A stretch of DNA of 64,000 nt. It comes from Podarcis bocagei. Its lineage: Eukaryota. Location of the stretch: assembly GCA_964188305.1 (NCBI GenBank), contig OZ076893.1; one strand, written 5' to 3'. Within the stretch, counting starts at the first letter, position 1, and every line of letters begins with the position of its first letter. This document shows, one piece after another, positions 1 to 29,794 of this stretch. Below the pieces are notes generated by a model. The model was not told where the DNA came from. It was given only the letters and a program-made list of their open reading frames with translations, and ran no database searches. Made by a program: the position numbers and the translations under genes.

Positions 1-170
1 AGAAAAAGGGGGGGGGGAGGAAAAAAACCCTGCAGGAACTCGCAAGACATTTTCGTCTTGCGAAGCAAGCCCATAGGAGATTCGTTTTGCGAAGCACCTC
101 CAAAACGGAAAACTCTTTCGTCTAGCAAGTTTTCCGTCTTGCGAGGCATTCGTCTTGCGGGGCACCACTG
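1..170. mobile_element. Right end of a Tc1/mariner (pogo/Tigger-like) non-autonomous element
   Basis: Ends ...ttcgtcttgcggggcaccactg followed by TA. The sub-terminal motif cgtcttgcg is repeated. The terminus is related to the CAGTGG MITEs elsewhere in the window. Confidence 0.7.
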
Positions 171-1083
171 TATCATGAACACACTGTTGATGCAATTGGT
201 TCTCAGCTAAAGTGGGTATTGAGCACACTAAAGGTTTCTGTGGAAGTCAGAATTTTCAGGTTGTGCTATCTGTTCGGTATAAGTGGGCCTACAACAAATC
301 TGTATTACAGATTGAAGAAAGGGAGGAAAAAACAACTTTCTTGAGTAACACTGGAACTTCCTCAAATAAGACAGACAGAGGTCAAAAGCTGAAGAAGAGA
401 ATGCAGAAGTCTCTTGCTTGATCCCACTGGTTGATATGTTCTGGTAGCACAAAAGAAATGAAGTGCTGGAGGGTGTCAGAACATCTCTTGTCTGCAGAGA
501 GCTTACAAATCTTAGGTGACAGACCACTGAATGGACTTGGCTGCAGGTTGTCAGGCTCCATGAACGAGGTGGATGGGTAAGCTGGCTGTCAATCTACTTG
601 AGCCAGAATCAGGTGACTGTTCCAAAGCAGCCAGGAGTCAAGGTGCTAAGCAGGAGCTGAGAGGGCCAAAGGCAAGTGAATATAGTTGAGGCAGGGATCA
701 AATCCAATGGAACAATTGTGGAAAGAGAGCAGAAACCAAGGCAATGTCCTCAGTGAGACGTACTGAGGAGCAAGCCTTGAGGCAAGGGTTTCCTTGATCC
801 GAGTGGGCACTGATTTGCCCTTGAAATCAGCTGAGCACTCAGTCACCCGGTACTGAAGCCCAGATGGCACTCTCAATGTGCTGAGATCCACCAACCAGGC
901 TTTCAGTAGAAACAGAGTTCTGGTGATGCATGAAGTCCTGGAATCTGGGAGCCCTAATTGGAGAGACACACATCCTCCTCTTTGTGTTTTACACAAAGAG
1001 TAGGCAGCTGAGGGCTAACGGACACTGAAGAAGACCTTGGGATTTTAACTCTAAAATCAGTAAGCAACATGCACATAGCAATA

Positions 1084-1323
1084 CAGTGGTACCTCGGGTT
1101 AAGGACTTAATTCGTTCTGGAGGTCCATTCTTATCCTGAAACTATTCGTAACCTGAGGTACCACTTTAGCTAAAGGATCCTCCCACTCTCGCCGCACCTC
1201 CACCGCGTGATTTATGTTCTCATCCTGAAGCAAAGTTCTTAACCTGAGGTACTATTTCTGGGTTAGCAGTCTGTAACCTGAAGCGTCCGTAACCTGAAGC
1301 GTCTGTAACCCAAGGTACCACTG
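1084..1323. mobile_element. ~240 bp Tc1/mariner-type MITE (CAGTGGTACCT...GGTACCACTG), TA TSD
   Basis: Terminal inverted repeats with TA on both sides. Near-identical copies are at 11653 and 53102. Confidence 0.9.
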
Positions 1324-3129
1324 TACAATGTGTAGTTTTGCAATTTCTCAGTGGTGAGCTATTGGCTACCCTGATAGGTACTGATTGTTTATCAAACCTA
1401 TGTCAGTCTTAAGAAAGGACTCATTTGGATACAAAAAAGAAAGAGAAAAGGTGAAATCATCTGACAACTGTAGAAAAACAAAACCAGTTAAACATTTTGC
1501 AGCCATGCAAATGGAAAGAATATTCCCTTTAGTCTTTAATTAAGACATATGAAGCAGAAAACAAGTTGAAGTAAAGCTACTTTGAATCCTATGATGAAGT
1601 GAAATGAACGATATTTATTTGAACATTTTTATATTTTAGAAAGAGGTTAAAAAAAAAAAAAGAGTCTTACTTTTACTTTGACAGTCAAGTCATAAGGATC
1701 TGTTTAGGATCTGTTCCCACCACTTTAAAAGTTAAGTTTTGCTTCCGAAGCACTCTGAGATCTCTGTGAGTAACTTGTACACAAAATCTGAAAGCACTAC
1801 AATGAAATCCACTGCAAGGAAATATGTCGTGGAACTATTTCAAAACTTATTTGGTTAGGCATCTCCATGTTCACTTGGACATGCAAATCTTTTCCCCCCC
1901 ATAAACTTTTCCCCTGATGTTCAATGAGGTGCCATTGTTTAAACAAAAACAGTTATTCTTTATAGTCTGCTATTCTCAATGTGATGAGTCTGCCTTATGA
2001 TCCGTATAAGTTTAATTAGAAAACTATAGCTGCTTATAATTCACAAAAACTGCATAATTGAAGAGGAAGAAGGGCAACCATCCCTGAGAGTTTAAGTGCT
2101 GAATAAAGTGCTTTCAATGAAAATTTACTGTGAATGCATTTTTTTTATTTTTTAAGAAAAGCAAATCTCGAACAACTAAATGCTACTATCCACAGTTGCA
2201 ACCCTCCCAATATCGCCAGCAAACTACCAACTTGCAACTATAATTCTGGGGTTGTGAGCAGGACCTGCAATGTCCAAACTATGAGGGGGAAAAGCATTGT
2301 AAGTACTGAGAAATGACATTTTACCATATTGTATCTTCATCACTCTGTAGTCCTTTGCACCAGGGCAAAAGAGAGGGGATTCTTATTTCACCCAGATCAA
2401 CGACTTCCCAACTACACACTGTGGGTGGGAGGGGGACATGGGAATAGGAACTGGGAGTGGAAAGAACTGGAAATATGTGCTCTTTAGAGAACTGATCTGC
2501 CTTCTTCCAAAGATACACCTTTTGAGTTGGAGCTGAGCTCTTGTTATGAATATTGGTTGTATTCACAAAGGTTGCACAATTGCAACATGCCCCATTTGTC
2601 TGCAAGATACTGTAAGATTTATGCCTAGAGGAAATCAGAGTTTACCAACCAGGTGCACAGAATTCCTCTTTAGTCTTGAAATTCTCCTAGTATAGATATA
2701 TTTTGACTCTCGCCTGTTCATCTGGGGGAGGTAGCAATCGCATTCGGCAACTGGCAGTGGCAACTGGCAGCCACTATAGCTATACCCAGTATTTCCCAGC
2801 AAGCAAAATGTAATAGCCAGCTAAGGCTACAAGAAGTTGTGGCCATTACTTCTATCCATATGGAGATAGGGAATTAAATGCACTAGCCATAGACTCAACA
2901 ATGCTTCCTCAGTAAAGGAATCACAGCTTGGGTTCCAGCCATTTTCAAAAAACGCTGTCACTCTCCCCTTCCTGGTAGAAAGGGGGGGTGAAAAGACAGC
3001 AAGTGCATTATACTTTTAAAATCACAGATAGCATCACATGGGACGACCCTGCACTAACACTGATCCTGACACCATGCTGATGTGAGCACAGCAATCACAT
3101 CAGCAAGTGTTCCAGTCTATAGTGTAGAT

Positions 3130-3234
3130 TCTGCAGTTTGGTTGTGCATTGCTATGTAACTGACATACAACAGATGTACGTGATGCAGATTGCTTTTACA
3201 TTGGCTACACGGCAATGCACAAGCAATCTGCAGA
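3130..3234. repeat. Imperfect palindrome (hairpin/MITE relic)
   Basis: tctgcagtttggttgtgcattgctatgtaac pairs with gctacacggcaatgcacaagcaatctgcaga. Confidence 0.6.
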
Positions 3235-4340
3235 TTTTCACCCGCGCACACCCAGTCTTAGCTGTGCCTTAGCTGGAAAACAATTTGCAAAAGAGGATTT
3301 TAAAGCTAGTCACATAATAGGGCTTTTAAACATCAAGCCTAGCTGAAAAGCCTTGCTCAGTCCAAGGCATGCACAAAGCTGCTGTATCTAAAACCTTAAA
3401 GAATTAGCTCTGGATGATATTGCCAATATGATTACTTTAGAGTACGAAATATTCTGATCTTTATCTACTATAACATTGAAATGCTTTCTTGGTTATAACC
3501 GTTCCAGTCCTGTTTAATGAAAATGCTGCTTGTTTGTGCCCCTTCATTTCAAAGCCAAATGAACTCATTTTATTATATTTATTATACAGTTTCTTAGAAA
3601 CAATCTCTTGGCCACGCTCCAGCAAAACCAGGAAAAAGGGTAGGACTGGGCAAATGAGAAGAATGGAGCCATGCAAAGCAGAGGGGTGGAATCGACCCAG
3701 TAGTCTAGGATAGCCTTCCCCTGCCACAACTGTGCTGGCTGGGGCTGATGGGAGCTGTATTCCGAAATATCTAGAGGGCACCAGGTTGGGGAAGGCTCCT
3801 GTAGGATTACTTCCACCTCTTGCTCAGTTCCAGGTCTATCCTTCCCCTGGCTTGTTATTCTAGTAGCCATGCTGACAGAAGGTGATAGTCTCCACCACTC
3901 AGAATGACCTAGGTGGGACTGAGCCTCCATTCCCTGGTTGGACTGCATGGGTGGATATATTTTTCTTTCTCTGTAAGAATCCAGCAGAGCAGCTTCCACC
4001 ACAGCATGTCAAGAGCAGCAGGGCATCTATGGTGCTTCACAAGTAAAAGCAGCCTGAGCAGAGAAAGAAAGAAGAATCAACAGGTGCTTAGCTATCACGG
4101 ACCTTTAGGACTGGCACTGCCTCCCTTTGGGGAGGCCCTTGCAGTGGTCCTGTGATTTACAGATGCTCCTCCACTTACCCATCCAAATTGGCATTTCACT
4201 AGTATTAATGTGGAGCAAAACTATGTTATTGGTACTCATCTTGGTAATGTGAAATTTGCTATAGATAAACATGACAGATATTTGGTTTTACAAGAATTCC
4301 TTCAGTAGTATCTTCTGACTTTTTTGTTGTAGATTTAAAA

Positions 4341-4469
4341 CAAAGATAAGAAACCTCTGGCCTTCAGGATGTTGTTGGACTACAACTCCCATCATCCATA
4401 ATCATTGGCCATGCTGGCTGATGGGAGTTGTAGCCCAACACCCAGAGGGCCACAGGTTCTCCACTCCTG
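4341..4469. mobile_element. hAT-type MITE with perfect 8-bp TSD (atttaaaa)
   Basis: TSD at 4333-4340 and 4470-4477. Internal palindrome ctacaactcccatc/gatgggagttgtag. Relatives occur near 3710, 7972, 16759, 32710 and 61730. Confidence 0.85.
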
Positions 4470-4709
4470 ATTTAAAAGGTACTTTTCATCATCCTGCTTC
4501 ATTTGCTGCTTTCCCTTTTTATATTGTTTACTTGTGTGACTAGTGTAACATGTGAACCAAAATCCATGGATTTCAGCCACAGAAACATTAATGCTCTCTG
4601 AAACTTCAGATTTTCCCCATGAGATGACTAGAGTTGCTGTGGCCCAAACTATATTTTGCTCATATAAAGAAATGCAAAGTAATGTGTCGCAGCAGGAGGG
4701 AGAAACTCC

Positions 4710-4994
4710 CTGGATTCTTCAGCTTGACTCATCTCTGCCTCTTGGCCTCCTTTCTCTCTTGCTTTAGCTTTTGACTCCAATTCTGTACTTTTCTGTGCCG
4801 TAGAGTCTCCCTGCTCACTAAACCCTGTTACCTCTTCAGCTTCCGACATATCCTCCTCCCAGTCTGCTCCCTCTTCTCCCTCTGACCACTCTGGGTCACC
4901 CCACGACCAACCCCTGGGCTCTGAGCCTTCTTCCCTTGGGGGTTCCCCAGCTGGTCTCTCCCACCATTCCTCCGTGTCTAGCTAGCCCATGACA
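4710..4994 (-). mobile_element. Probable partial LTR (begins TGTCATGGG on the minus strand)
   Basis: Abrupt GC/purine-rich block starting with a TG terminus. The other end and a TSD were not identified. Confidence 0.4.
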
Positions 4995-5871
4995 TATCAA
5001 GTCTTCTTGAAAATATCTCATGACCAGATATAATTTAGTTTTGTTCCTAAAGATGGAATTCTCATTTAATCACCTTTTAGGACACCCTAGCATCACTTTG
5101 CTGCAGGAGTGTGGTTTTATAGTTCTAGAAATCATGTTCTGCACTTCAAACTGAAAATTGGGTTGAAGACCTTTTAGACCTGTACATTAAAGAATGAATC
5201 ATGTATTACAGGAAGGATAAATTTGAGAAATGTAATGCAATCTGGCAACCTTTTCTAGAATTGTTCTCTAATTGATTGTTCATCTTCTGCTGAAGTCTCA
5301 CAGTACTCAACATATATTCCCTCTCTTTCCGCCAGTTTATTATTTTCCCATTACATTAAAACTGTCTTTCTCAAAACCAACAGTTTCTGAGGAACATTGA
5401 TTGGGAAAAGATATCAGGAAGGCCCATAAATCAGGAGATTAAAAAACCCCCTGCCACCTTCAATTGCAGTATCTTCAATTGCAACATTGATGTTTCTGTT
5501 ACTCTCCTATTAATAATCCTAAAATTAACAGAATGTTGATATGGTGTGGTAAATCAGGATCTGTGCACATGGAGGGAGAACTAGATACTGCTTCTTGGTA
5601 TCTATAAGGAACCCCTAATATCTAATCTGGTCCCCTAGGAAAATGGCACAAACGGAATGTGAATTCAAATAAGAAGATATACAAATCAACCCAGCTGGTC
5701 AATTTACATCATGATTCTACATGCCAGATTGCATTGTGCTCACAGCGAAAGGATTGTTTAAACAGCGAAGTTTGCATACAAACCGCCATTTTGTCTACTG
5801 CTGCAAACCTTCCTAATACGGGTCAACCAGTGGCAGGTAGAATTTGTGATCTGTACTTGAGACAAATGCTT

Positions 5872-6016
5872 CAGATGACAGCTCAGCTGATAGAGGATGA
5901 GGCTCTTAATCTCAGGGTCGTGTGTTTGAGCCCCACATTGGGCAAAATATTCCAGCATTGCCGGGTGTTGGACTAAATGACCCTTGCGGTCCCTTCCAAC
6001 TCTACAATTCTATGAT
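5872..6016 (+). mobile_element. tRNA-Lys(CTT)-derived SINE with CR1-like 3' tail
   Basis: Head gctcagctgatagaggatgaggctcttaatctcagggtcgtgtgtttgagccccacattgggc is a degenerate tRNA-Lys. Tail is ggactaaatgacccttgcggtcccttccaactctacaattctatgat. Confidence 0.8.
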
Positions 6017-7924
6017 CCAATCATCTGGATAGTGGTGAAAAACCACCCGGCTGAAAAATACAGACACAAAGTTGCCTGTGCGAAACAACCAGTCATTTTC
6101 TCTGACTCAGCCGAGTTGTAGTTCCTCCCATTCTGAACCCAACACGTATTCATGCATGAGAAGACTATCTCAGTCCACGCAGCAAAAAACCCATTTCATT
6201 CTCCATTATGAATTAGAACACCATTTGCTTCTGCGTTTCTTCACTGTGGTTACACAGAGTTGTTTAATAGCATTACAGTGGCACAGTCTGGTTTCAATAC
6301 ATGTCCTGTTCTTTCTCCTATCACAGAACTGACTGCCAATTCTTTCTGATTACCCTTTTTCACAGAGGATGGGCCTATTCGTTCTTCCCTTGCTCCCAGA
6401 GGAAGAGGACACTTTCTTTCTCAGAATCAATGGTCTGATGGCAGCTGCTTTAAACTGTAAACTTCCAGATGGGGTTGACTATAAAGAGCAGAGCTTCGTT
6501 AGCATATTTACACTAGATTGACGGAATCTAGCCTTAACTCATCTACCTCTCATAAAGATTCTGACATTTTTATTCAGTTTGAGAAATCAAATGGAAATCA
6601 GTGGGACTCCAGCATGCCCAAAGTACTACTCAGTATACAAGAGGATTTTTCGGTATAATTTTAATGTAAGTACCCGGTACCTGTTGCATTTACATATTCA
6701 TATGCCACTTAAAAAAAAGAGGGGAATGAGAGTGATTCCCAATATGAAAAACACATTTACTTTTTTTAAAAGTCATGACCACAACCCAGGACAGAATCAG
6801 TTGAACTTAATTTAGTTAATTCAATAATCTTAAGTATTACCAAACCTGTTGGATTCTAAGTAGCCCTTAGCTAAAACCTGCAGGGGGTTGGACTAGATGA
6901 CCCTTGTGGATCTCTTCCAACTCTACAATACTACACTTATCTGAGTCTATTAAAATATACATTATGGCTGTAACAGTAAATACTTAGCCATGCTCAGTTG
7001 TAACCATGCTTAAAAGCATTTGTTCACATACATCCATTGTTACTCTTTGTTTTCCCTTTCTCAGTTGTTGCTATCAAAATTTAGACAGTAAGGTCCTTGG
7101 GGGAAGGGACTTTGCTTATGGAAATCTGCAAAATGCCATTACACTGATGGCAGTGAATTATTATTAATAAACAAGATGTACAAACAGTATATTAAGAAGA
7201 GCACACCAGAAGGAAGGGAAACACTCCTTGTGATTTGAAGGCCCCAGACTGCTGAGAGAAAACAAAACATGAACAGCAAGGGCAGCAATGGACATTGGCA
7301 TGAGGAACGTGTTTTCCCAGGACACTGTGTATTACAAGTTGTTGCCCACAACATTTCTAAAAGGAACATAAATAAATGTTTCTACCATTAGAAGTAGAAC
7401 AACAGGATGCAACATGCAATGGGTAATATTGCTTCCCTCCTTTCAGAGAGATTTCTTCACCAACCCAACGGGATTGGCTGTCTGAGGTCATCCTCACAGA
7501 AAGGCCTAAGAAAAGATGATAAGCCCTGGGAATCTTCCACTGTAACCAGTCCTTTTAAAAATAATTCAAGTAGCTGAACACACACTTTTTTTTGTATGTG
7601 CCAGTCACAACAATAATTTCCCAAATTAATCACAGACACACAATGCAAGCATTTCAGTCCTTGGTTTAATCTGATCTTGATTCTCCTGGGCAACGAAATG
7701 TCCACAGACATCAAAGCTAGACATGAGAGTTGAAAGGATTAATTGCTCAGATGTCTATAGAATTAAATCCTCTTCGGGCACTATAGTTGTAAGAAGCAAT
7801 ACAGTACAGCTGGGGCTGCACAGGAGATCAGCACTGTCAATGTGTAAGGAGCTTCCACTGAAAACACAAAGGTTCCCTCTGCAGATGTTCACTAATCATG
7901 CAAGAAGCCAGGAAAAACATAGAC

Positions 7925-8230
7925 TCTTATGCAGTCAGACCATTGGTTCATTTAGCTTAGTAATTTTTCTACAGGTATGGCATCTTCCAGATGTTGTTGG
8001 TCTTCCATCAGCCCCAGCCAGCTTGACTAACGCTCAAGACTGATGGGAGCGGCAGCCCAGCAGCATTTGAAGGGCCCCTGTTGACTACCCTTGGTCTACC
8101 TATGCTGACTGGCAGAGGGTCTCCAGGATTTCAGACAGGAGTCTTTCCTAGCTCTACCTAGATATGCCAGGAATTGAACCAGAGACCTTCTGCTTCAAAT
8201 GAAGATGTTCTACCAACCAGCTGCACTCCT
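7925..8230 (-). mobile_element. tRNA-derived squamate SINE (Squam3-like) interrupted by a hAT-type MITE (~7972-8093)
   Basis: The reverse complement matches the SINE at 51727. The inserted block resembles the 4341 MITE. Confidence 0.6.
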
Positions 8231-8524
8231 TATGGGATGAACATTAAGGCTAAGCATTGCAACCTCAGTATATCTTAGAGAAATAAAACCTGAGGTTAGC
8301 TAGTTTTCTTTGTGGATTTTAAAATAATTCATTCAGTACCTTTGATCCCCACAGGTTACAGAGCACCCATGATCAGTGGCTCCTTCCACCTATTCATGTA
8401 GAGAATGATAATAACCTCAGGCTATCCACAGGGTGGCCAAACTATACACAGAAGAAACAATGTTGGTGCAAATATCCCTGCACCACGACACACCGTTATT
8501 TGCAAGTACACCTTTCCACAACTC

Positions 8525-8746
8525 TGCTTTTGGACTAACATGCCAATAAGCAAGCACAAAAAGTCCTCATGCAGTAGTGCATGCAGTAGCCAAATGTTAT
8601 TTATGTAAAGTACACACCATCACTATTTCACAACACTTGAATTAGTGATGGCGTGTACTTTACATAAATAACATTTGACATGACCATAGGGCATCACTGC
8701 ATGAGGACTTTTTGTGCTTGCATGTTGGCATTTTAGTCCAAAAGCA
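8525..8746. repeat. ~220 bp near-perfect palindrome
   Basis: Arms of ~105 bp (tgcttttggactaa...tacacaccatcactatttca / tgaattagtgatggcgtgta...ttagtccaaaagca) surround a ~7-nt loop. Confidence 0.85.
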
Positions 8747-8772
8747 ATTTCACATGTACTATACACCTGAAT

Positions 8773-9118
8773 GGAACGTGGGTGGCACTGTGGGTTAAAC
8801 CACAGAGCCTAGGGCTTGCCGATAAGAAGGTTGGCGGTTCTAATCCCCACGAAGGGGTGAGCTCCCATTGCTTGGTCCCTGCTCCTGCCAACCTAGCAGT
8901 TCGAAAGCACAAAGTGCAAGTAGATAAACAGGTACCACTCCAGCGGGAAGGTAAACAGCGTTTCCGTGTGCTGCTCTGGTTCGCCAGAAGCAGCTTAGTC
9001 ATGCTGGCCACATGACCCAGAAGCTCTATGCTGGCTCCCTCGGCCAATAAAGCGAGATGAGTGCCGCAACCCCAGAGTCGTCCGCGACTGGACCTTATGG
9101 TCAGGGGTCCCTTTACCT
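8773..9118 (+). mobile_element. Sauria-type SINE, full length, 13-bp TSD (tatacac[c/t]tgaat)
   Basis: tRNA-like head with A/B boxes and ...cctttacct tail. TSD at 8760-8772 and 9119-9131. Confidence 0.9.
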
Positions 9119-9600
9119 TATACACTTGAATATTCAGGGAGCTTGCAACCACATGTTCATGTGGAATACATGTATATAGCAGATTACAGTGTCACAGTGT
9201 ACACCTCCTGTATTTATATTGTACACTTTTAATCCATGAAGTGTGTCCTCTGTTGCTATACAATACATAATGTGGATTATTAGTGCACAAAAGTAGTGGA
9301 ATGTAATGCTAAACTACTTACATTCTAACTTCCCACAATGTTTAAAACACACACACACACACAGGCACACTTCCACTGAGTCTAGTTTCCAGGTGCAATC
9401 TGCAAAGTAGTTACACTTCTCTAAATGGCCCTGACTATTAAAACTGAAACAGGAAACACAGGAAAGCAAAGTTAAATAGGGGAAATACTTGATTGCTTCA
9501 CAGTATGATTCTGCATGCATTTACTTGGAAGTAACTGCCAGTGTGTTGAATGAAGCCTGTTACACATGCTTACAGTAGCTATGTGTATGGGGGTTGTGCT

Positions 9601-9733
9601 CATGGGAATAGCCAGGATCTTTGTTAGGGGGGCAGGCTTTTGTTGGGGGTGGCAGAACCTCAGTTAGTGATGTGTTTTTCTTGATGGGGGAGGGGCAGCT
9701 GCCCACTGCCCCCCCCCCTTGGCTACACTCATG
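9601..9733. mobile_element. Short hAT-type MITE
   Basis: TIR catgggaatagcca / tggctacactcatg. Flanks gttgtgct / gttgtgtc form a degenerate 8-bp TSD. Confidence 0.65.
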
Positions 9734-9826
9734 GTTGTGTCAAGGGCTTCACTGAAAAGGTGGGTGTTGAGGAGGGTCTGTGGGTGCCAGACCCAAACTT
9801 GAGAAGCCACTGTAAATGCTAATAGC

Positions 9827-12071
9827 CCTGATGCTATTCCATCTGAACTGATCAAAGCCAAGCCAGAGTGGTGGGCTCCGATACTAGCAGAACTATTCAC
9901 TATGATAGATAGCTCTGGTACCATACCTAACTCATGGCAGCAATCTATAATTATCCCAGTCTTTAAAAAGGGTGGCAAAAAGCTGCCATCCAATTATCAG
10001 CCAATAAGTCTACTGTCAAACATCTGGAAATTGTATGCTAAACATCTGTTAAATAAACTAACTACTTGGCTTGATGGGAATAACATCATAGGTCCAGAGC
10101 AGGCAGGGTTCAGGCCAGGGAAATCTACAGTACTTTACGCAACTGTTTGGTGTTATCTCATTTAGCCACCAAGTACACACGGCTTCATAAAGAATGTCTT
10201 TATGTGGCCTTCCTTGATATGAAGGCTGCTTTTGACACTGTCGACAGGGGGCTGGTATGGTCCAAATTGGAGACGATTGGCCTAGAACCTAGATTACTTT
10301 ACTTGATCAAAAAGCTTCACATAAAGAACACCTGTCGCATAAGAACAACAGCAGGGAATGTAATGACAGAGCCTGTCATTATAAACAGAGGAGTAAAGCA
10401 GGGCTGTGTACTCGCTCCCTCTCTTTTTAACCTTTTTCTTAACAACCTTGCTTCTTTACTAAAACAGGTGGATGCCCACAGCCCAAAACTCAATGCATCA
10501 AGCATTCCTGTCCTTCTATACGCAGATGATGTGATTTTGCTTTCACGGACAAGAATTGGCCTAAAATGTTTGTTAAATTCCTGTATTGACTATCTGTCCA
10601 GAATGAAATTGTGCATGAACTTTAATAAAAGCAAGATAATGTTTTTTTGGGAATTCACGCAAATGTTATAGCTGGGTATTTGGTGGAAAACCCATCCAGC
10701 AGGTATTCGAATTCAACTACCTGGGAATCACATTCCATCATAGGCTTCTATGGTCCTTGCACTGTGCAATAGCGGTGAATGCCAGTAAGATGTCTACGCA
10801 GGCCATAATGCGTTTCTTTATAACAAGAGGTAATTCGCATATCCCCTCTGCCCTCAAGGTCTTCAACGCCAAAATTATAGCTCAGTTGCTCTACGGAATT
10901 CCAGTCTGGCTGCCAGGGTTTACCCAGCTAGTAGAACAAGTGCAGGCAGCTTTCCTTTTTAAGATTTTTGCTGTCCCACGTTGTGTACCCTATGCAGCCT
11001 TCTGTCTAGAGGGAGGTCAACACAAGGTAGAGAGACCGTAGCCTGGGCAAGATTTCTTACATGCTGGTTAAACATCTGCCTCACAACAGATAAAGATCCT
11101 CTCCTTAGTGAAGTTTTGCTAGATCCCTTTCTTTCCCCAGGTTTAACAATGGTTTAACATAAAGGTACAGCAACTTGGGCTGTCAGTTGGATTTTTGCGA
11201 TCGTTGTCCCCACCATCTGCCAAGGCTATAATAAAAACCAGGTTGTGGGACACTGAACGCCAGGAACTGACAGCCGCAGCAGAGAAAACATGTTCCCCTC
11301 TTAACTTTCAGCTTTCTTGGGCACATGAAATTAACCTCCATTATCTTGAATTTTTGCTTAATCCTCAGGAAAGAAGGGCATTTTCACTGGCCAGGTTTAA
11401 TTCAAATCCTTCAAACCTCCTATGGGGAAGGTTCTCGAGAATGGTGGAAGGAGAAAGAATTTGCCCATGTGAAGACCATCAGGTGGAAGCTCTTAAACAT
11501 ATGGTTCTTAAATGTAAACTATATGTTGATCTCCGCCAGCAGTTCCTTGATCAACTCTGCATCCCCAAATGGAAACCGGAGTTAGAGGTCATACGATTTC
11601 TATTACTGGGGAATAATCAGGAGCTCAGCAAGTTAGTGGCTAACTATCTTTACAGTGGTACCTCGGGTTAAGTACTTAATTCATTCCAGAGGTCCGTTCT
11701 TAACCTGAATCTGTTCTTAACCTGAAGCACCACTTAAGGTAATGGGGCCTCCCGCCGCCGGAGCACGATTTCTGTTCTCATCCTGAAGCAAAGTTCTTAA
11801 CCCGAGGTACTATTTCTGGGTTAGCGGAGTCTGTAACCTGAAGCGTATGTAACCTGAAGCGTATGTAACCTGAGGTACCACTGTATTTGGTTTTTTGTCG
11901 TCGAAACACATTGCAGACGTCTGATCTCCCTGAAGACCTAGAGATGTAATGTTAGACTGCTTTGCCTCTTTCATTTGACAAATGTTTTGTGTCACTGGGA
12001 AGGCGGTAATTCTGTATTGATTTGCTTTGGATGTCTGTATGTGATACCAATAAAAGGTTTGAGAATTGAAT
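9827..12071 (+). mobile_element. 5'-truncated non-LTR retrotransposon (RTE-X/L2-group-like), frameshifted RT plus C-terminal Cys/His motif
   Basis: RT motifs (NYQPISLL, QAGFR, FLDMKAAFD, GVKQGCVLAPSLF, LLYADD) are spread over ORFs 9902, 10147, 10757 and 11195. C-terminal motif RICPC..E..KHMVLKC. 3' end AATAAA plus gaatt repeats. Candidate TSD taatagc at 9820-9826 and 12072-12078. The clade is uncertain. Confidence 0.9.
11653..11883. mobile_element. Tc1/mariner-type MITE nested in the LINE ORF end
   Basis: CAGTGGTACC...GGTACCACTG termini with TA TSD. Same family as the 1084 copy. Confidence 0.9.
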
Positions 12072-12169
12072 TAATAGCTGCGAAGTTTTACCACGCAGTG
12101 TTTTCAAGCTTCACAGAGATCTTCAGGCAGACTTGGAAGTTTCTGACAGAACTCTGTGTGAGTTGGAAG

Positions 12170-12930
12170 ACTGCACGCTACATTATAGATGAAACTACAA
12201 CGCGCCGACTGTGTGTGTGCGCGCGCCTTATTATAAAAGGGAATAAACTGCTTTTCGAACCCACAGGCAGCGGGTGGGGAGCAGCCAGAACGGGTACGTG
12301 GAGCAGATAAGAAAGGAGAGCGGAGGAGGCGGGCAAGTGAATGGCAGCTGCAGGCGGAAGAGCGATTACTCACCGACGGTGGTGATATAGGAAGGGGGCG
12401 GAGACGGCTTGGTTGGGCAGGGCTCGGTGTATCGCCTCAGGATCGAGCTTTTCCCCACGTAGGAGTCCCCGGCCATTACTATCTTGGCCTGCAGTACTTT
12501 CTCCGGCTGAGCCATGGCCCACGAAGCAGAGAGCAGAGCGGCTGCAGCTGCTCCCGGCGCAGGACTGAACCGAAAGTTGCCCGTCGGGCGTCGCTCCTTT
12601 CCACCTCCAGACACGCGGCCAAAGGAGGGCCCGCCCTTCCTCCGCCGCCTTCCTCTCCGAAGCGTCGCCAAGCCTCGGCTTACGCGAGAGATTGGAGCTG
12701 GATTTCCCCCCAACAACAGCGGGCCGACTTCTGTTTTGCTGCTTAACTATATGCCCCCAGAGCAGGGCTCCCTGTGCCTTTGAACAGTGGTGTCTCAGGC
12801 AGAAATTCAACTGGTCAAGCTGTCCTCCCTCCCTCTCCCTCTCCCTCCCTCCGGGCTGCCTACCACGCAGCTGCTATAAGCACAGAGGGAGAATTGACAT
12901 GACGGCGGATGTGACAACCCGTTCTCGACT
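12170..12930 (-). promoter_or_regulatory. CpG-island-like promoter of the Rab-like gene, with GC box (GGGCGG, 12631-12636) and CCAAT box (12691-12695) on the minus strand
   Basis: A GC/CpG-rich, non-repeat segment in an otherwise CpG-poor window. It spans the Rab-like ATG, and the motifs are read directly from the sequence. Confidence 0.7.
12374..12515 (-). CDS. First coding exon of a Rab-family small GTPase (MAQPEKVLQAKIVMAGDSYVGKSSILRRYTEPCPTKPSPPPSYITTV-G)
   Basis: Strong Kozak context (gggccATGG), beta1 strand KIVMA followed by P-loop GxxxxGKS, switch-I YITTVG, and a consensus phase-1 donor G|gtgagt. It lies in a CpG-rich region. Confidence 0.88.
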
Positions 12931-13075
12931 AGTTGGGGGTGATGGTGGTTGTAGACTAGTCCATCCACAAGTCCTTGCGCCACAGCCCAGACTCCCAGGC
13001 ATGTGGTCCAATACTGAAGTGGCCTTATATGTTACCACTGCTCAGTGGAAAAACCCTGAAGTCCTGCTTTCCTCC

Positions 13076-13222
13076 ATCATAGAATCAAGAGAGTTGGAAG
13101 GGACCCTGCAGATCCCTGCAGTCCAACCTACAATGCAGGAATAAGTAGCTGCTGTCCCATACGGGGATCAAACCTGTAACCTTGGTGTTATCAACACCAC
13201 ACACTAACAAACTGAGCTCCCC
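13076..13222 (-). mobile_element. tRNA-Ile-derived SINE with CR1-like tail
   Basis: Minus-strand head gctcagtttgttagtgtgtggtgttgataacaccaaggttacaggtttgatccccgtatggg resembles tRNA-Ile. The tail is shared with the 5872 element. Confidence 0.7.
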
Positions 13223-14009
13223 AAGCTCCCCTGGTTATTATCTGTCTTATTAGATCATATCTAAAAGATAACGTAACAGGGGAAATGCTGGAATTGGAAG
13301 CCACGATTAGTGTGGAAATTGATTAAATCATAGGTACTCCTAGAGAATTTTTTAATTTTTCAGCTCATTGTTCCTTTCATAAGGTGGATGATGGCTAGGA
13401 CTTGGAAAAGTTGAAATGAATCACCCTAATGGTTTTGAAGTTAATGTCTAATTCTGTGTGTTGTTTTACTGGCAATAAAACATAACACAACATGTTCACT
13501 TGATAAAAGTTATGTGTCCTTATTTGGGGTTTGACAATTAATGGTAGGCAACTGAATGGCTACAGCTTCAGGTTTTTGGTTTTTTTAAATTAATGTATTG
13601 AAAACTAAAGTAGCTTAATTTCCACTCTCATTCCTAAAAAGGTTATTGGCTTTAGTTGTCCTCCTTTCACTGAGTTCTAAACTGAGTTCTGTTGTCAGTT
13701 TGGGAATCCTGTATTCTTTGTAGTGGCATAGGGGATACAGCATTCTAAACGTACATCTCCTAATTTATGAAATATTATGCACCGTGTGAGTCTCTTTCTT
13801 TCCCACCCCTCAAAAATACTCTACTTGATTTTGTACCCTTCCCTCCTGAATCTCCAGTCACTTTCCTTTTCTCTTAAACTTCTGCCTGAAAAAACCTCTT
13901 TAAGCTATTTCCAGTTTTTTTATTGTTCTGATCAATGATGTCAACTACCTGTTGACTAAATATGCTGCAATAGCAAGCAAAGGTTTTTAGGCATTGCATT
14001 CTTGTATAG

Positions 14010-14010
<1 letters not shown>

Positions 14011-14044
<34 letters not shown>
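14011..14044. repeat. (TG)17 microsatellite
   Basis: Read directly from the sequence. Confidence 0.95.
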
Positions 14045-14045
<1 letters not shown>

Positions 14046-24597: not shown

Positions 24598-24738
24598 TTA
24601 TTTATTGTACGGCACACACGCAGGTAGTATGACAGTGGAGCAAGCAGGACCTGCCAGGGGCTCAGCTACATCTCCTTCCAGCTCTGTCCAGGTTCCGTTC
24701 TCAGGACTGTAGCAAATGGTAGAAGATTTGTAGGCACC
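24598..24738 (-). CDS. KLHL14: KLHL14 last coding exon (141 bp; GAYKSSTICYSPENGTWTELEGDVAEPLAGPACSTVILPACVPYNK*)
   Basis: ORF track 24598..24807. Acceptor is gttacag|. The C-terminus ...CVPYNK-stop is characteristic of KLHL14. Confidence 0.96.
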   Translation of the reverse strand, partial: GAYKSSTICYSPENGTWTELEGDVAEPLAGPACSTVILPACVPYNK

Positions 24739-25364
24739 CTGTAACACAACATAGTGTTGCTGAGGTAGCAGATAAATGACATCCAAGCAAAATTTGAACA
24801 GCTTCAACTAGAAAACAACTGGTCCTTGGTTGCTCTGCAACCTTTACAACTAAGATGCACACACACTGCCTTGATTTAGTCAAAGCTATGGTAGAGTCAT
24901 CTCGAAAGTAGGGCTTTGGGTGAGCCAAGTGCAAGGTAGTGGGAGCTTGAGCTCCTGACAGTCAATTGGGGGTTTTCGGCAGGATGCTGGAAGTGATAAC
25001 AGATAATCTAGTCAGCAACCCTGCTTTCTCTTTGTGAGAGACTCAGAGAGAGAATGCAGGAGGCAATAGCTGCTGCTTCTGCTGCTCCTCCTTCTCAGGA
25101 GTTGCAATGCATCATGACAGACTGCCAGGGGCTTGGTAAAAACCAATCTCTGTCACCAGCCTGGATAATAGCACCCAAGAATATCCAGATTCCCCCACAT
25201 CATCTCTTCTCCCCATGCTTTTAGGGATATACTTAGTCTCTTTGCTCTCCAAGCAGTAAAACTGCTTGATTATAAAGTTCACATCTGGAATGAAGGACAA
25301 ATTCACCAAGGCAATAAATAACTGTAGTATAGATTGTTTGCATATTCTGCACATACAACCTGGC

Positions 25365-26210
25365 ATGGTTAGAATCTCACCCTTCAATTCAGAATTTCAT
25401 TCTCACGTAAATAGCTTTGCAGCCATGTGTCTGGAAACTGGACAAAGGCTGCTGGAAACCAAAGCATGGCTCACCACTATAAAATTCTGACTCTGCCTAC
25501 ATTTCATGTCCAATCCAGCTTCTTTCACTTTCCACATGCTGGCATAAGCCCGCCACTCCAAAAGGCTAGCTTGCATTGAGAGCAAAATGGGAACCTATGG
25601 CCTATCACCTGAGTCACTACTTGTGCTCCCACAACTGGAAGCATTCCAGACAATCAAGTGAAGAATTACCGTTATAGAGACTGAATTTCAAACCCTTTGC
25701 AGTGCAGCCAACAAAACCTGTTCCCCATCGGGGTTGGGAATACTACCCTCATTTGGCCAAGACACTCAATATTCCCTCGCAAGATTTAACATCTTACCAC
25801 CTGCAGTTTTGCAAAGTAGATTCTCAAAAATCCCATACTCTGAAATATACTGCCCTTGTGGCACAAAATATGTCGAATCCATCGCACATGTTTTATTTTA
25901 CTGCCCATTTTATGCAAAAAAATTTGATAAGTATTGAAGGAGGGGATTTATCGCACTGACACTTCCATGGTGCCTTATCTGCTGAACAATTGTAGTAATG
26001 GCATCGTGGAGAATGTGGCAAGATTTTTGAGTGACACTATGAAATTACGTCACCATGGGTCCTAAGAGCTATCTTTGTACCTCATGATATCTGGACAGTT
26101 TTATCCTAAAGTATCTCCTACTGTATTTTATTAACTGTGTTGTGTTCTGATCCATGTATACGATGCACTTTTTTAAGCCAGTAAAGGAGATTGATTGATT
26201 GATTGATTGA
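25365..26210 (+). mobile_element. Decayed 3' LINE fragment, same broad group as the 9827 LINE, with (GATT)n tail
   Basis: Peptide LARFNILP...YCPCGTKYVESIAHVLFYCPFY parallels the C-terminus of the 9827 element. Confidence 0.75.
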
Positions 26211-26397
26211 TGTTAATAGCTTAAAAAGAAATAATGACTACTGATTTTGCAAAGCAGGTTATAAATCAGCCAGATATTTTCCATACATCAAAGATTCTGA
26301 CAGCAATTTATTTAGATATGTATCATTCCCGCAGAATGGTTGCAGCATGCTGTCAAATGATAACTGAGAGATCCATGTACGGACAAGGGATACATAC

Positions 26398-26555
26398 CAT
26401 ACTCCAGCTGTAGCCTCCTACAAGGTAAATGCTGTCATCAAGAACTGCACAGCCAGGACCACTGCGACCCTCTAAAATAGGAGTTTGCAAAATATTCCAT
26501 TGATCACCTTTTGGGTCATAGCATTCCACGAGCATGACATCAAGATGCGAAAAAC
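26398..26555 (-). CDS. KLHL14: KLHL14 coding exon (158 bp; FSHLDVMLVECYDPKGDQWNILQTPILEGRSGPGCAVLDDSIYLVGGYSWSM)
   Basis: ORF track 26353..26568. Boundaries are gtacag| and |gtatgt. Confidence 0.96.
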
Positions 26556-27910
26556 CTGTACAACACAATTATCAAATAATGTGAAACCACTTATTTTAAG
26601 AGAATGAGCACATGGTACTTCATCAATGACATACAAAACTTCGCCCACCTTAGTAGGTTCATCATTAAAGACTAAATTGTAAAGAACAGGAGAAAACCTC
26701 TTAAAGTAAGAAAGTGAAATACTTTCCTTTTGTCATCTTCATCACAACCTTCAGCATTGAGCTAACATTTGCTTTTTTCCTTAATAATAAACAACATATT
26801 GGCTGCCATTAGTTGCCAAAGAACATTCATGGGGAGTTACTGATATATGAGATTAGAATGTTTTTTCTACTTCATGATACCAGGAGTGAAATACCAGGAC
26901 TGAAATGTGAAGGCACTATGGAATATTTGAGCACTCCCTGCCCTTTATCTCTCTCACACGAGGCAGCTGAAGAATGGAAGAAGGAGAAATTAGAGTACAG
27001 AGATAAGGGAGAAACAATGAAAGGGAAGAAAGGTGTGTATTTTAGACAATAGTAGACATATGAGTAAAGCAAGAATGGAGAAATAATGAGAGGGGGAAAG
27101 TGGCCATTTTAAACAATGGCATAAATTTGAGAAGATCAGAGGGTGATACTGAGAGGGGAAAGTAGCAGCTTAAAACAAGATTTAAGAACAGTGAGAAGGG
27201 AGGTAGGAAAGGCTCTATAGCTTCTGTGTTATACCTATCTCCATTTCTCCTTGTTAAAGCTGTTTGTAAAAAATAAAACAAAAAACTCTCAATATTCTCC
27301 ATCCCTGCTTAACTCAAGCCTCTGCTATTGTTTAAAACTGAAATTTTTCTTCTCGGGGTCTCTCCACCCTTGCTTTACTCAAACTTCTTCCATTGTTTAA
27401 AACATGCATATTTTCTCTTTTCTCTCTTCTCATTGTACACAAGCTTCTCCTTCCATGTGTGAGAGATAAAGGATGTGGAGCCATCAAATATCCTATAACA
27501 ACCTTCACACAATGTATTTCACTTATGGCATCATGTATTGCCTCTCTTTGTTCCAGATTCAAAGTAGCAATTTAGAAGAGATAATTTATTAACAAAAAAA
27601 ACCCCAAACACCCATATATGTACAACATCCATCAACTGAACTTAACCTTCTCTAACTGAACAAGCTCACTTGACAGTCATGTTCTTAAGATTCTGTCATC
27701 TTAAAGATACAGTAACATACACCATCATAGCATGTTAGCACAAAGAGGGCTGCTGAAAAGGAGAGAGCAGGAGGGATAGAAATGGGTGGGTGGGTGTGGC
27801 CTGGATGCAAGGGAGAGTTGAAAAAGGAGAAATGAGGTGGTAGGAATGGGGATGAAAGGTGATAATGGTGTACAAAGGGAGATGCAGAATTTAAGAGAGG
27901 ATTGCTCAGC

Positions 27911-28153
27911 CCCTGCTCCTGCCAACCTAGCAGTTCAAAAGCATGAAGTGCAAGTAGATAAATAGGTACTGCTCCATTGGGAAGGGAAATGGTGTTTCCG
28001 TGTGCTGCTCTGGTTTGCCAGAAGCGGTTTGTCATGCTGGCCATATGACCTGGAAGCTGTACGCCGGCTCCCTTGGCCAATAAAGCGAGATGAGCACCGC
28101 AACCCCAGAGTCGGCCACGACTGGACCTAATGGTCAGGGGTCCGTTTACTTTT
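27911..28153 (+). mobile_element. 5'-truncated Sauria-type SINE
   Basis: Matches the 3' two-thirds of the 8773 copy. Confidence 0.85.
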
Positions 28154-28840
28154 AAGGCATGGAAATGGGGATTATCTGTGTGGAAGGGAGAAATGAGAAG
28201 AAGAGGGGGAGAAGAAAAGGGGGTGAAGGTGAAAAAGGTGCTTAGCAGTTATAAGGTGTGGGAGGAGGAAGGTGCAGGAGATTACCCTGGTGGTCGTTTG
28301 TGCAAGGTTACACGAAAGGGGGAGGAGGAGGAGGAATAGACATAGGGGTGAAGGTGAAAAAAGGTGCAAGGCAGGGTTGCAGAACAGGACAGAGGCTTCA
28401 GAAATGGGATGGGAAGATGAATAGTGAGCTTAGTAGTTACATAGAGTAGGAAAGGGAAGCTGTAGAGGGTTAATGGGGGGAGGTCAGGGGTGTTGGCAAG
28501 TGGAGCAAGCAGGGGTGTAGCCCCTAGTAAGATGAATGCAAATAATGATTTTTAGAAATAAATTTCATAGACAATTTTTGAGATGAGTGTGGGATTTTAA
28601 ATGTTGTTAAATATTACTCCTAAAATTAAGGACTTGTTTCTTTGCAGAGCCTTAGCACAGCTTCTTCTCCAGCTTGGGAAATGATTTACAGAGGGAAATA
28701 CTGTTGGCAATTTGGGTCAGAAATAATCTGTTTGTTACAGTGAATTTACGGCGATGACAAATCATCCATGCTTCTGAGTAATGGAAGTTCCCATTTTTGT
28801 ATTATCTAAAGCATTCATTACTCATTTATTTAATGTAGTG

Positions 28841-28842
<2 letters not shown>

Positions 28843-28887
<45 letters not shown>
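28843..28887. repeat. (AC)n microsatellite
   Basis: Read directly from the sequence. Confidence 0.95.
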
Positions 28888-28889
<2 letters not shown>

Positions 28890-29010
28890 TGCTGGCTCAA
28901 GGATCATGCTAAATTGTGTGGCAGGGTTTTAAACTTAGTTAACTAACCTAGCAAAAATAGTGTTTATCAAAAGACAGAATATTACATTGTTTTGCTATTA
29001 AAAATGTGAC

Positions 29011-29169
29011 CTTTCAAATGATTTCCTCCGATTGCATACAGTCGATCATTCATTACAGCCAATGCATGGATTGCTCTCTTTGTGTTCATATCTTGTTTTC
29101 TAGCCCAGACATCCATTACAGGGTCATAGCAGTACAGCCAGGGAACGTATTCACCATTGTGGACACCTC
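29011..29169 (-). CDS. KLHL14: KLHL14 coding exon (159 bp; GVHNGEYVPWLYCYDPVMDVWARKQDMNTKRAIHALAVMNDRLYAIGGNHLKG)
   Basis: Manual translation gives a kelch repeat. Boundaries are tttgtag| and |gtcaca. Confidence 0.95.
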
Positions 29170-29271
29170 CTACAAATCAAATATACCTTCATTAGTTAAA
29201 GGAAGCACCCCACCTTAAAAGAATAACTGGGTTTTGTTTTGCGATGAAGGGGAGTTTAGAAAACAACTTGC

Positions 29272-29462
29272 CAGAAATATAGATTTTGCCATTATGTACA
29301 GCTCCTGCATGTGCCGCCAAGGGCTGTGGTAGGGAAGATACATAACGCCATTCATTTGTCTCTAAATTATAGCATTCCACACTTGACAAGTATCCAGTCT
29401 CATTTCTCCCACCTATCACATACAAGTTTTTGTCAAGCCGACAGGCATAAAAACTGGCTCTC
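29272..29462 (-). CDS. KLHL14: KLHL14 coding exon (191 bp; RASFYACRLDKNLYVIGGRNETGYLSSVECYNLETNEWRYVSSLPQPLAAHAGAVHNGKIYISG), ends at a GC donor
   Basis: ORF track 29192..29425 contains the kelch peptide. Acceptor is ttctctag|. The only frame-preserving donor is TCTG|gcaagt. Confidence 0.95.
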
Positions 29463-29794
29463 CTAGAGAAAAAACAAATAGAGCAGTTAGTTTCTAGTGA
29501 CTAGAATTAATTCCATCATTCTGTCTTACAGAACTTATCACCTGCTATTCTAACATGAATCCCCCCACTCATTTATCCCTGAGAATATGGGTGACTTTCC
29601 CCAAAAAGGTTGCAGTGCACTCCCAACTCGGACCACTCCCCACCTCCCCACCCCAAAGTATCACCCAAAATTTCCAAAAGTATTCACTTGTAATGATTTC
29701 TGGATTATCCATTGCAATTTCTTATTTACAAAAAAGGAATCATTAGGAAAAATCAAAATGCCAACATCATAATGACTTTATGGAGCAGCTACAT

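What the first reader, a model, noticed from the sequence alone, without database searches (positions are those of the whole stretch)
12374..12515. Unassigned Rab-family GTPase gene immediately downstream of KLHL14
Seen in the sequence: an intact first exon with Kozak ATG, P-loop, switch-I Thr and a consensus donor, inside its own CpG-rich promoter. This argues for a real intron-containing gene rather than a retrocopy. Established knowledge: a phase-1 intron within the T-[IV]-G glycine is the position used by Rab8/10/13-type genes. I recall no Rab gene next to human KLHL14 (neighbours GAREM1 and CCDC178). Inference: this is a divergent Rab paralog retained in reptiles and absent, or located elsewhere, in mammals.
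Basis: partly seen in the sequence, partly recalled or inferred. Interest (0 to 1): 0.75.

Follow-up and report, generated by a model that had tools for sequence, protein, structure and literature searches.

The report
First exon of lizard Rab10-like gene
This is the genuine, expressed first exon of a second Rab10-type trafficking GTPase gene that lizards, birds, turtles, amphibians and some fishes keep between KLHL14 and GAREM1; no mammalian or teleost copy was found, and databases list it only as "Rab-10-like".

Summary
On the minus strand, 12515..12374 holds an ATG in Kozak context, 47 codons plus one base, a P-loop, the switch-I Thr and a GTGAGT donor. It sits in the only CpG island of the window.

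The peptide is 100% identical to residues 1-47 of Podarcis muralis XP_028592909, "ras-related protein Rab-10-like" (203 aa, six coding exons, 38 kb). Exon 2 lies about 1 kb beyond the window's left end. Transcript-like contigs from three studies leave the genome exactly at the predicted donor.

Orthologues exist in squamates, turtles, crocodilians, birds, frogs, a salamander, caecilians, coelacanth, bichir, sturgeon, gar and bowfin. No mammal or teleost copy was found. The family is monophyletic and groups with Rab10, away from Rab8, Rab3 and Rab1. It shares all five Rab10 intron positions.

It lies in the order Kelch gene, Rab10-like, CABIT gene (GAREM1 by position). True Rab10 likewise precedes a CABIT gene in pigeon. 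The likeliest origin is an ancient block or whole-genome duplicate of RAB10, later lost in mammals.

The gene is not unannotated, because RefSeq predicts it in over 100 species. I found no proper name and no study of it. Interest is moderate.

The parts
12374..12515 (-). Coding exon 1 of the Rab10-like gene. It encodes M1 to the first base of G48: strand beta1, the P-loop GDSYVGKS, helix alpha1, a Pro-rich insertion and the switch-I Thr46.
   Evidence: It is 100% identical to residues 1-47 of P0131/P0133 (Podarcis muralis Rab-10-like). Pfam Ras/Roc match residues 11-31.
12368..12373 (-). Splice donor GTGAGT of intron 1, phase 1 inside the Gly codon of T-V-G.
   Evidence: Sequence. Contig X1 record 7 ends at 12374. 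X3 record 16 and X9 record 24 match up to 12373 and then run on elsewhere. True Rab10 has the same position and phase.
12516..12739 (-). 5' untranslated leader. This is the minimum extent; the transcription start is at or upstream of 12739.
   Evidence: X3 record 16 covers 12739..12373 and X1 record 7 covers 12610..12374. No ATG lies in this stretch.
12100..12700 (.). CpG island and promoter region, the only one in the window.
   Evidence: GC 0.58-0.67 and CpG o/e 0.7-1.07.
1..12367 (-). Part of intron 1, which is about 18.9 kb in the related assembly and continues beyond the window's left end. It holds a LINE reverse-transcriptase remnant and SINE copies.
   Evidence: Window-to-L001 mapping and exon map. 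RVT_1 hit at 10084-10668. No RNA depth on unique intron sequence.
24601..29473 (-). Context: the last four Kelch-repeat coding exons of the upstream neighbour (KLHL14 by position), at 29473-29270, 29176-29000, 26559-26395 and 24756-24601. That gene's coding sequence ends about 12 kb upstream of the Rab ATG, on the same strand.
   Evidence: tblastn with frames of the bowfin BTB-BACK-Kelch neighbour gives 85-93% identity. Pfam Kelch_1 E=3e-18 to 8e-9. Atlas Kelch clusters.

Best explanation
The stretch is coding exon 1 of a real, transcribed gene for a 203-residue Rab GTPase. I call it Rab10L here; RefSeq calls it 'ras-related protein Rab-10-like'.

Shown:
- Transcription starts in a CpG island at or upstream of 12739.
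- The exon is spliced at 12374|12373. In a related Podarcis assembly exon 2 lies about 19 kb downstream, and five further exons complete a canonical Rab.
- The full protein has the P-loop, switch-I Thr, DTAGQE, NKCD and ETSAK boxes, all five Rab-family motifs and a C-terminal CCKL prenylation site.
- The gene family is orthologous across bony vertebrates except mammals and teleosts. It is under purifying selection and groups with Rab10.

Inferred:
- It arose with its CABIT-domain neighbour by duplication of an ancestral Rab10-GAREM block. The early vertebrate genome duplications are the likeliest source. I put this at about 0.65-0.7.
- The gene was then lost in mammals and teleosts.
- The protein works as a geranylgeranylated membrane-traffic switch of the Rab8/10/13 exocytic-recycling type.
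- Tetrapod copies lost the guanine-stacking Phe, and the P-loop Gly is replaced in all copies. Sauropsids carry a variable Pro/Ala-rich loop before switch I. Nucleotide exchange may therefore be faster, and regulator recognition different, than in Rab10. This last point is speculative.
For: Identity:
- The exon peptide equals residues 1-47 of P. muralis XP_028592909.
- The big HMMER search found only proteins that share the Pro-rich insert.

Expression and splicing:
- Contigs from three studies cover the leader and exon only. They stop or diverge exactly at the donor.
- One is a 1119-nt contig with 748 nt lying elsewhere. That length fits 224 nt of leader, 612 nt of coding sequence including the stop codon, and about 283 nt of 3' UTR.
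- Depth is zero on the unique intron and upstream sequence.

Gene structure: six exons with GT/AG sites translate exactly to the annotated proteins in Podarcis, pheasant and bowfin.

Family:
- More than 100 orthologue clusters were found, from ray-finned fishes to birds.
- The family is monophyletic at 100/100, with a topology like the species tree.
- It forms a clade with Rab10 at 99/97, excluding Rab8, Rab3 and Rab1.
- The best solved-structure match by sequence is Rab10 (202 bits against 178 for Rab8A). By fold it is 5szj.
- Pfam Ras E=8e-55.

Shared descent with Rab10:
- All five introns are at the same positions and phases as in Rab10.
- Exons 2-5 have identical lengths of 61, 139, 90 and 102 nt.

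Synteny:
- Rab10L is followed by a CABIT gene in Podarcis, pheasant and bowfin. A BTB-BACK-Kelch gene lies upstream in bowfin and in the window.
- True Rab10 is followed by a CABIT gene in pigeon.

Selection: dN/dS is 0.20 for lizard against pheasant Rab10L, and 0.025 for turtle against pigeon Rab10.
Against: - Only exon 1 lies in the window. The rest of the gene was read in another assembly that is 96.5-97.9% identical, not in this genome.
- I did not see the run-on letters of the spliced contigs. Joining to exon 2 is therefore inferred from the break point and the contig lengths.
- One bulk RNA-seq run of the species, sampled at 12%, had no read on the exon. Expression is low or tissue-restricted.
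- The tree does not resolve when Rab10L split from Rab10. The AU test accepts it as sister to vertebrate Rab10 (p=0.535) and equally as outside all animal Rab10 (p=0.385). Even a Rab8 grouping is only marginally disfavoured (p=0.073).
- Absence from mammals and teleosts rests on ranked lists of annotated proteins, with at most 8000 candidates scored. It does not rest on genome searches.
- No functional data exist.
Confidence: 0.9

Rival explanations
1. Rab10L is a later, local or segmental duplicate of a Rab10-GAREM block in the bony-vertebrate stem, or an older animal paralogue, rather than a product of the vertebrate whole-genome duplications.
For: The tree leaves the branch point inside the Rab10 clade open. 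The AU test does not reject Rab10L lying outside all sampled Rab10 (p=0.385). No shark, lamprey or hagfish Rab10L appeared in the lists, which held only their true Rab10.
Against: The duplicated unit includes the neighbouring CABIT gene in the same order and orientation, which fits a block or genome duplication. No invertebrate has a Rab10L-like sequence in the lists. From memory, the human paralogous regions 2p23 (DTNB, ASXL2, RAB10, GAREM2) and 18q12 (GAREM1, KLHL14, ASXL3, DTNA) look like classic ohnolog blocks.
Confidence: 0.25
2. The gene is decaying or non-functional in lizards. It would be an expressed relic whose nucleotide pocket is already damaged (P-loop Gly to Tyr, loss of the stacking Phe, a floppy Pro-rich insert).
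For: Rab10L evolves about 8 times less constrained than Rab10, with dN/dS 0.20 against 0.025. The insert varies in length and sequence between species and is modelled with low confidence. One RNA-seq run had no reads on the exon.
Against: The reading frame and all G boxes, the Rab-family motifs, the catalytic Gln and the prenylation Cys pair are intact in 41 species spanning roughly 400 My. A dN/dS of 0.2 is clear purifying selection. Splice sites are canonical. Exon 1 differs from the other assembly by one synonymous base in 142, while the flanks differ by 3-5%.
Confidence: 0.04
3. It is simply the lizard orthologue of mammalian RAB10, or of RAB8 or RAB13, misplaced by the reader.
For: Many database records call it 'Rab-10', 'Rab-8B' or 'Rab-13-like'.
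Against: Sauropsids have a separate, nearly invariant true Rab10 at another locus (turtle L002 and pigeon L003). Rab10L is only 48-51% identical to true Rab10 in the alignment and 53% to human Rab10 by structural alignment. It forms its own 100/100 clade.
Confidence: 0.01

Closest known systems
RAB10 (vertebrate and invertebrate Ras-related protein Rab-10)
   Same: It is the closest relative by sequence (202 bits), by fold (5szj) and by tree (joint clade 99/97). The exon-intron plan is identical, and a CABIT-domain gene follows downstream. The G boxes, NKCD, the FFETSAK.NINIE block and the Thr equivalent to Rab10 Thr73 in FHT are all shared.
   Different: It is a separate locus and clade, with 48-51% identity to true Rab10. 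The N-terminal MAKKTYDLLFK signature is lost. The P-loop Gly is never Gly. The Phe of DDAF is lost in tetrapods, and sauropsids carry a 3-9 residue Pro/Ala-rich insert. The tail is a shorter basic one ending CCxx. Constraint is about 8-fold weaker. No mammalian or teleost copy was found.
RAB8A/RAB8B/RAB13 (other members of the Rab8 group)
   Same: They share the same supergroup and a similar length, with 178 bits to Rab8A.
   Different: Rab8 falls outside the Rab10+Rab10L clade. Forcing Rab10L with Rab8 costs 11.9 lnL units (p=0.073).
Ohnologs retained in non-mammalian vertebrates but lost in mammals, as a general class
   Same: The phyletic pattern matches (fishes, amphibians and sauropsids yes, mammals no). 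So does the conserved position next to a paralogous neighbour pair.
   Different: Teleosts also appear to lack it. The timing of the duplication is not resolved by sequence.

Membership tests
Rab family of small GTPases | G1-G5 nucleotide-binding boxes (GxxxxGK[ST], switch-I Thr, DTAGQ, NKxD, [ET]SAK) | tested here: met
   GDSYVGKS and T46 are in the window exon. DTAGQE, NKCD and ETSAK are in exons 2-5 of the same gene in L001. All are invariant or nearly so in 53 sequences. Pfam Ras E=8e-55.
Rab family of small GTPases | Rab-specific RabF motifs (IGxDF, KLQIW, RFxxxT, YYRGA-like, LVYDIT). I recalled this definition from Pereira-Leal and Seabra. | tested here: met
   VGIDF, KLQIW, RFHTFT, FFRGA and LVYDIT are present in P0131 and conserved across the family.
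Rab family of small GTPases | C-terminal Cys motif for geranylgeranylation | tested here: met
   CCKL in lacertids, CCxx in fishes, the salamander, caecilians and sauropsids, and CxxC in frogs. The modification itself was not tested.
Rab10 subfamily | Groups with Rab10 to the exclusion of other Rab8-group members | tested here: met
   The Rab10+Rab10L clade has 99/97 support. Rab10 is the top match by sequence and by fold. The outgroup sample was small: two Rab8, one fungal Ypt2, one Rab3 and one Rab1.
Rab10 subfamily | One-to-one orthology with mammalian RAB10 | tested here: not met
   True Rab10 exists separately in turtle and pigeon at a different locus. Rab10L is a paralogue.
Rab10 subfamily | Shared exon-intron structure | tested here: met
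   The five introns are at identical positions and phases. Exons 2-5 are 61, 139, 90 and 102 nt in both genes.
Whole-genome-duplication ohnolog of RAB10 | Paralogous neighbours in conserved order around both copies | tested here: met
   Rab10 is followed by a CABIT gene in pigeon L003. Rab10L is followed by a CABIT gene in L001, L004 and L006. Only one neighbour pair was tested; the wider paralogon is from memory.
Whole-genome-duplication ohnolog of RAB10 | Duplication dated to the vertebrate stem (sister to vertebrate Rab10) | tested here: inconclusive
   The position is a polytomy in the tree. AU p=0.535 for the vertebrate-sister placement and p=0.385 for a placement outside all Rab10.
Processed retrocopy or pseudogene | Intronless copy without its own promoter, with disabled frame | tested here: not met
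   The gene has six exons, a CpG-island promoter and intact frames in 41 species, with dN/dS 0.20.

The most novel reading that the evidence does not exclude
Rab10L is an ancient, never-studied eighth member of the Rab8/10/13 group. Its nucleotide pocket has been remodelled: the P-loop Gly is replaced in every species, the guanine-stacking Phe is lost in tetrapods, and sauropsids have a disordered Pro-rich loop ahead of switch I. It would then behave as a naturally fast-exchanging or otherwise atypically regulated Rab. It would be missing from the mammalian and teleost model organisms on which Rab biology was built.
Probability: 0.3. Interest if true: 0.6.

Novelty: new member of a known kind. 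Interest (0 to 1): 0.4.

Why it matters
Rab10 is a heavily studied trafficking switch, involved in GLUT4 traffic and cilia and a substrate of the LRRK2 kinase. A second Rab10-type gene has been conserved for some 400 My in fishes, amphibians, reptiles and birds. It was not found in mammals or teleosts, so the vertebrate Rab set inferred from human, mouse and zebrafish looks incomplete. Chicken and Xenopus offer tractable systems to ask what the extra switch does.

It also exposes an annotation problem. In many sauropsid records two different genes both carry the name Rab-10. The practical gain is modest, because ohnologs lost in mammals are common and no function is yet attached to this one.

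Tried and rejected
- A motif scan of all six frames and tblastn with lacertid proteins found no further Rab exon in the window. The gene body lies to the left, outside it.
- The 47-residue peptide alone gave only sub-threshold Pfam and PDB matches over residues 11-31. The Atlas features gave only 'Ras fragment'.
- Five of six literature searches found no paper that names or studies this paralogue. These used 'Rab10-like', rab10b/rab10l, Rab family with chordates, Rab10 with ohnolog, and LOC495396 with related phrases.
- Klöpper et al. 2012 (PMC3425129) lists no second vertebrate Rab10.
- The only trace came from the LOC495396 search: a newt iris transcript annotated by its match to X. laevis LOC495396 (PMC3628982).
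- The findings index has no note containing KLHL14 or GAREM.
- The look-up for bichir protein P0161 found no record. Turtle Rab10 (L002) and Xenopus Rab10L (L005) have no called neighbour within 10 kb.
- My first splice-junction scripts failed on junctions where the BLAST segments overran exon ends. I resolved the junctions by reading the sites directly and by exact translation of the assembled coding sequences.
- Rejected readings: chance ORF, retrocopy, true RAB10 orthologue, and reptile-specific duplicate.
- No N stretch was filled or examined, and no human contig was fetched or searched. Two human protein entries appeared in search lists (P0056, a Rab3A-like cDNA product, and P0199, a PDB Rab10 chain). 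P0056's sequence was printed once and not used further, and neither entry was put into any alignment or tree.

Full report
**Observation.** On the minus strand an ATG at 12515-12513 (context GGGCCATGG) opens a 142-nt exon. It reads MAQPEKVLQAKIVMAGDSYVGKSSILRRYTEPCPTKPSPPPSYITTV plus the first base of a Gly codon, and it is followed by GTGAGT at 12373-12368. GDSYVGKS is a P-loop, and T46 is the switch-I threonine. Positions 12100-12700 form the only CpG island in the 64 kb, with GC 0.58-0.67 and CpG o/e 0.7-1.07 against window means of 0.40 and 0.22. No ATG lies in the RNA-supported leader. Taken alone, the peptide gives only weak Ras/Roc matches over residues 11-31 and Ras-fragment look-alikes in the Atlas. 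No other Rab motif lies in the window.

**Identity.**
- An exhaustive HMMER search with the 47 residues returned a handful of significant hits. These included turtle, parrot and gecko proteins that share the unusual Pro-rich stretch before T-[IV]-G.
- A word search with the turtle protein found more than 100 clusters, nearly all named 'ras-related protein Rab-10-like' by RefSeq. They come from turtles, birds, crocodilians, squamates, frogs, axolotl and caecilians.
- The window peptide is 98% identical to the Podarcis lilfordi protein. It is 100% identical to residues 1-47 of Podarcis muralis XP_028592909, which is 203 aa.
- The gene is therefore already predicted in this genus. It is unnamed rather than unknown.

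**Gene structure.**
- In a P. muralis assembly (L001) the gene spans 37.9 kb and has six coding exons of 142, 61, 139, 90, 102 and 75+3 nt. All sites are GT/AG, and the assembled coding sequence translates exactly to the protein.
- The window aligns to that locus at 96.5-97.9% identity. This places exon 2 about 1 kb beyond the window's left end.
- Exon 1 differs from L001 by a single synonymous base, whereas the flanks differ by 3-5%.

**Expression.**
- Contigs of three runs from three studies were laid on 10000-15000. They cover only the leader and exon, apart from repeats.
  - X1 record 7 spans 12610..12374 and ends at the last exon base.
  - X3 record 16 is a 1119-nt contig. Its first 371 nt match 12739..12373 and its remaining 748 nt lie elsewhere.
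  - X9 record 24 matches 12549..12373 and then runs on for 28 nt.
- The one-base overhang to 12373 is expected, because exon 2 and the intron both begin with G.
- Depth is zero on unique intron and upstream sequence. These runs therefore behave as RNA, and all three contigs break at the predicted donor.
- The 1119-nt length fits 224 nt of leader, 612 nt of coding sequence including the stop codon, and about 283 nt of 3' UTR.
- I did not see the run-on letters, so the junction to exon 2 is inferred.
- A bulk RNA-seq run, sampled at 12%, had no read on the exon. Expression is low or tissue-restricted.

**Family and distribution.**
- A second word search, with the toad protein, added coelacanth, bichir, sturgeon, paddlefish, gar and bowfin proteins. 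These carry the family signatures KLAWE[YH]G, YFRGA[HQ]G, WMKD and DVVxL...CC.
- No mammalian or teleost protein scored above invertebrate Rab10 in either list. The only teleost in that list (P0169) is true Rab10.
- This is absence among annotated proteins, with at most 8000 candidates scored. It is not a genome search.

**Relationship to Rab10.**
- Rab10 is the best solved-structure relative by sequence, at 202 bits against 178 for Rab8A and about 173 for Rab3A and Rab1A.
- An AlphaFold model (pLDDT 76) has the Rab fold, with low confidence only in the insert and switch I, in switch II and in the tail. Its best fold match is 5szj, human Rab10.
- True Rab10 sequences were fetched. A maximum-likelihood tree of 42 rows makes Rab10L monophyletic at 100/100, with a topology like the species tree. 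It joins Rab10L to Rab10 at 99/97, excluding Rab8, Rab3 and Rab1.
- The branch point inside that clade is unresolved.
  - AU tests accept Rab10L with vertebrate Rab10 (p=0.535).
  - They accept Rab10L outside all Rab10 (p=0.385).
  - They only marginally disfavour a Rab8 grouping (p=0.073).
- All five introns sit at the same codon positions and phases in turtle and pigeon Rab10 and in Rab10L. Exons 2-5 have identical lengths. The duplication was therefore at the DNA level.

**Synteny.**
- Rab10L is followed, on the same strand within 3-8 kb, by an 883-886-aa CABIT-domain gene in Podarcis, pheasant and bowfin. This gene is GAREM1 by position.
- In bowfin a 604-aa BTB-BACK-Kelch gene ends 3.8 kb upstream.
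- Its last four Kelch exons are found in the window on the minus strand at 29473-29270, 29176-29000, 26559-26395 and 24756-24601, at 85-93% identity.
The name KLHL14 itself rests on position and was not tested.
- True Rab10 in pigeon is likewise followed 5.2 kb downstream by a CABIT gene. The duplicated unit was thus at least Rab10 plus a GAREM-type gene.
- From memory, human RAB10-GAREM2 at 2p23.3 and GAREM1-KLHL14 at 18q12.1 lie in paralogous blocks that also hold ASXL2/ASXL3 and DTNB/DTNA. That points to the early vertebrate genome duplications.

**Protein peculiarities.**
- The P-loop position that is Gly in all 12 sampled Rab10 is never Gly in the 41 Rab10L sequences. It is Tyr in lacertids.
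- The Phe of Rab10 'DDAF' is the equivalent of Ras Phe28, which stacks on the guanine. It is kept in fish and coelacanth Rab10L, lost in amphibians, and replaced in sauropsids by a Pro/Ala-rich insert of variable length and sequence.
- The catalytic Gln, the Thr in FHT (the Rab10 Thr73 position), NKCD, ETSAK and the Cys pair are all conserved.
- dN/dS is 0.20 for lizard against pheasant, and 0.025 for turtle against pigeon Rab10. This means purifying selection, but a much looser one than on Rab10.
- Faster intrinsic nucleotide exchange is a reasonable but untested inference, by analogy with Ras F28L-type mutants.

**Literature.** Of the six searches, five found no paper that names or studies this paralogue. 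Klöpper et al. 2012 lists no second vertebrate Rab10 (PMC3425129). The only trace is a newt transcript annotated by its match to X. laevis LOC495396, the name the source gives the Xenopus laevis member. It is listed among transcripts higher in dorsal than in ventral iris during lens regeneration (PMC3628982). The chordate Rab survey that I recall (Coppola et al. 2019) is not in the library, so prior description there cannot be excluded.

**Verdict.**
- The thing is ordinary in kind: a Rab gene's first exon.
- It belongs to a conserved Rab10 paralogue that I found no study of, and for which no mammalian copy was found.
- It is already present in automated annotation, often under the misleading name Rab-10.

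Noticed in passing
window 10084-10668 (+), with adjoining open frames to 11668: A LINE-type reverse-transcriptase remnant (Pfam RVT_1, E=5.5e-25) lies inside intron 1, antisense to the Rab gene.
   Followed up: partly
window ~11650-11890: A short interspersed repeat has enormous depth in all four runs: summed contig depth above 100,000, and 300-500x in raw RNA reads. Many variants and loose ends occur at 11651, 11753 and 11885. A related copy lies at ~1223-1402, where the open frames share the words ANPEIVP.VKNFASG.
   Followed up: no
window 13006-13339: A patch 300-600 bp upstream of the RNA-supported leader carries contig depth 25-65 in the three transcriptome-like runs. It looks like a tRNA-derived SINE; its sequence ends ...AACCTGTAACCTTGGTGTTATCAACACCAC. 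It is a repeat or an upstream transcript, and I did not resolve which.
   Followed up: no
window ~5660, against L001 16837-22398: The related Podarcis assembly has about 5.5 kb in intron 1 that the window lacks. This is an insertion or deletion, probably a mobile element.
   Followed up: no
window 24601-29473 (-): Four Kelch-repeat exons of the upstream neighbour (KLHL14 by position) are 85-93% identical in protein to the bowfin gene. Its further 5' exons should lie at higher coordinates in the window.
   Followed up: partly
database records: Names collide. In Chelonia, Caretta, Struthio, Gavia, Anas, Alligator, Bombina, Microcaecilia and Amia, among others, the Rab10L gene is recorded as plain 'Rab-10' or 'RAB10 protein'. 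Elsewhere it is recorded as 'Rab-8B', 'Rab-8A-like' or 'Rab-13-like'. One pigeon model is fused with GAREM (P0055).
   Followed up: partly
window 12821-12855 and 14000-14055: These are low-complexity runs, a CCCTCT-type run and a CA/TG microsatellite. The read tool skipped them as repeats.
   Followed up: no
L003 (pigeon) and L002 (turtle) gene models P0212 and P0223: The true Rab10 models used here carry spurious insertions after exon 1 (98 and 24 residues) that look like retained intron sequence. The canonical 200-aa coding sequence assembles cleanly from six exons.
   Followed up: yes
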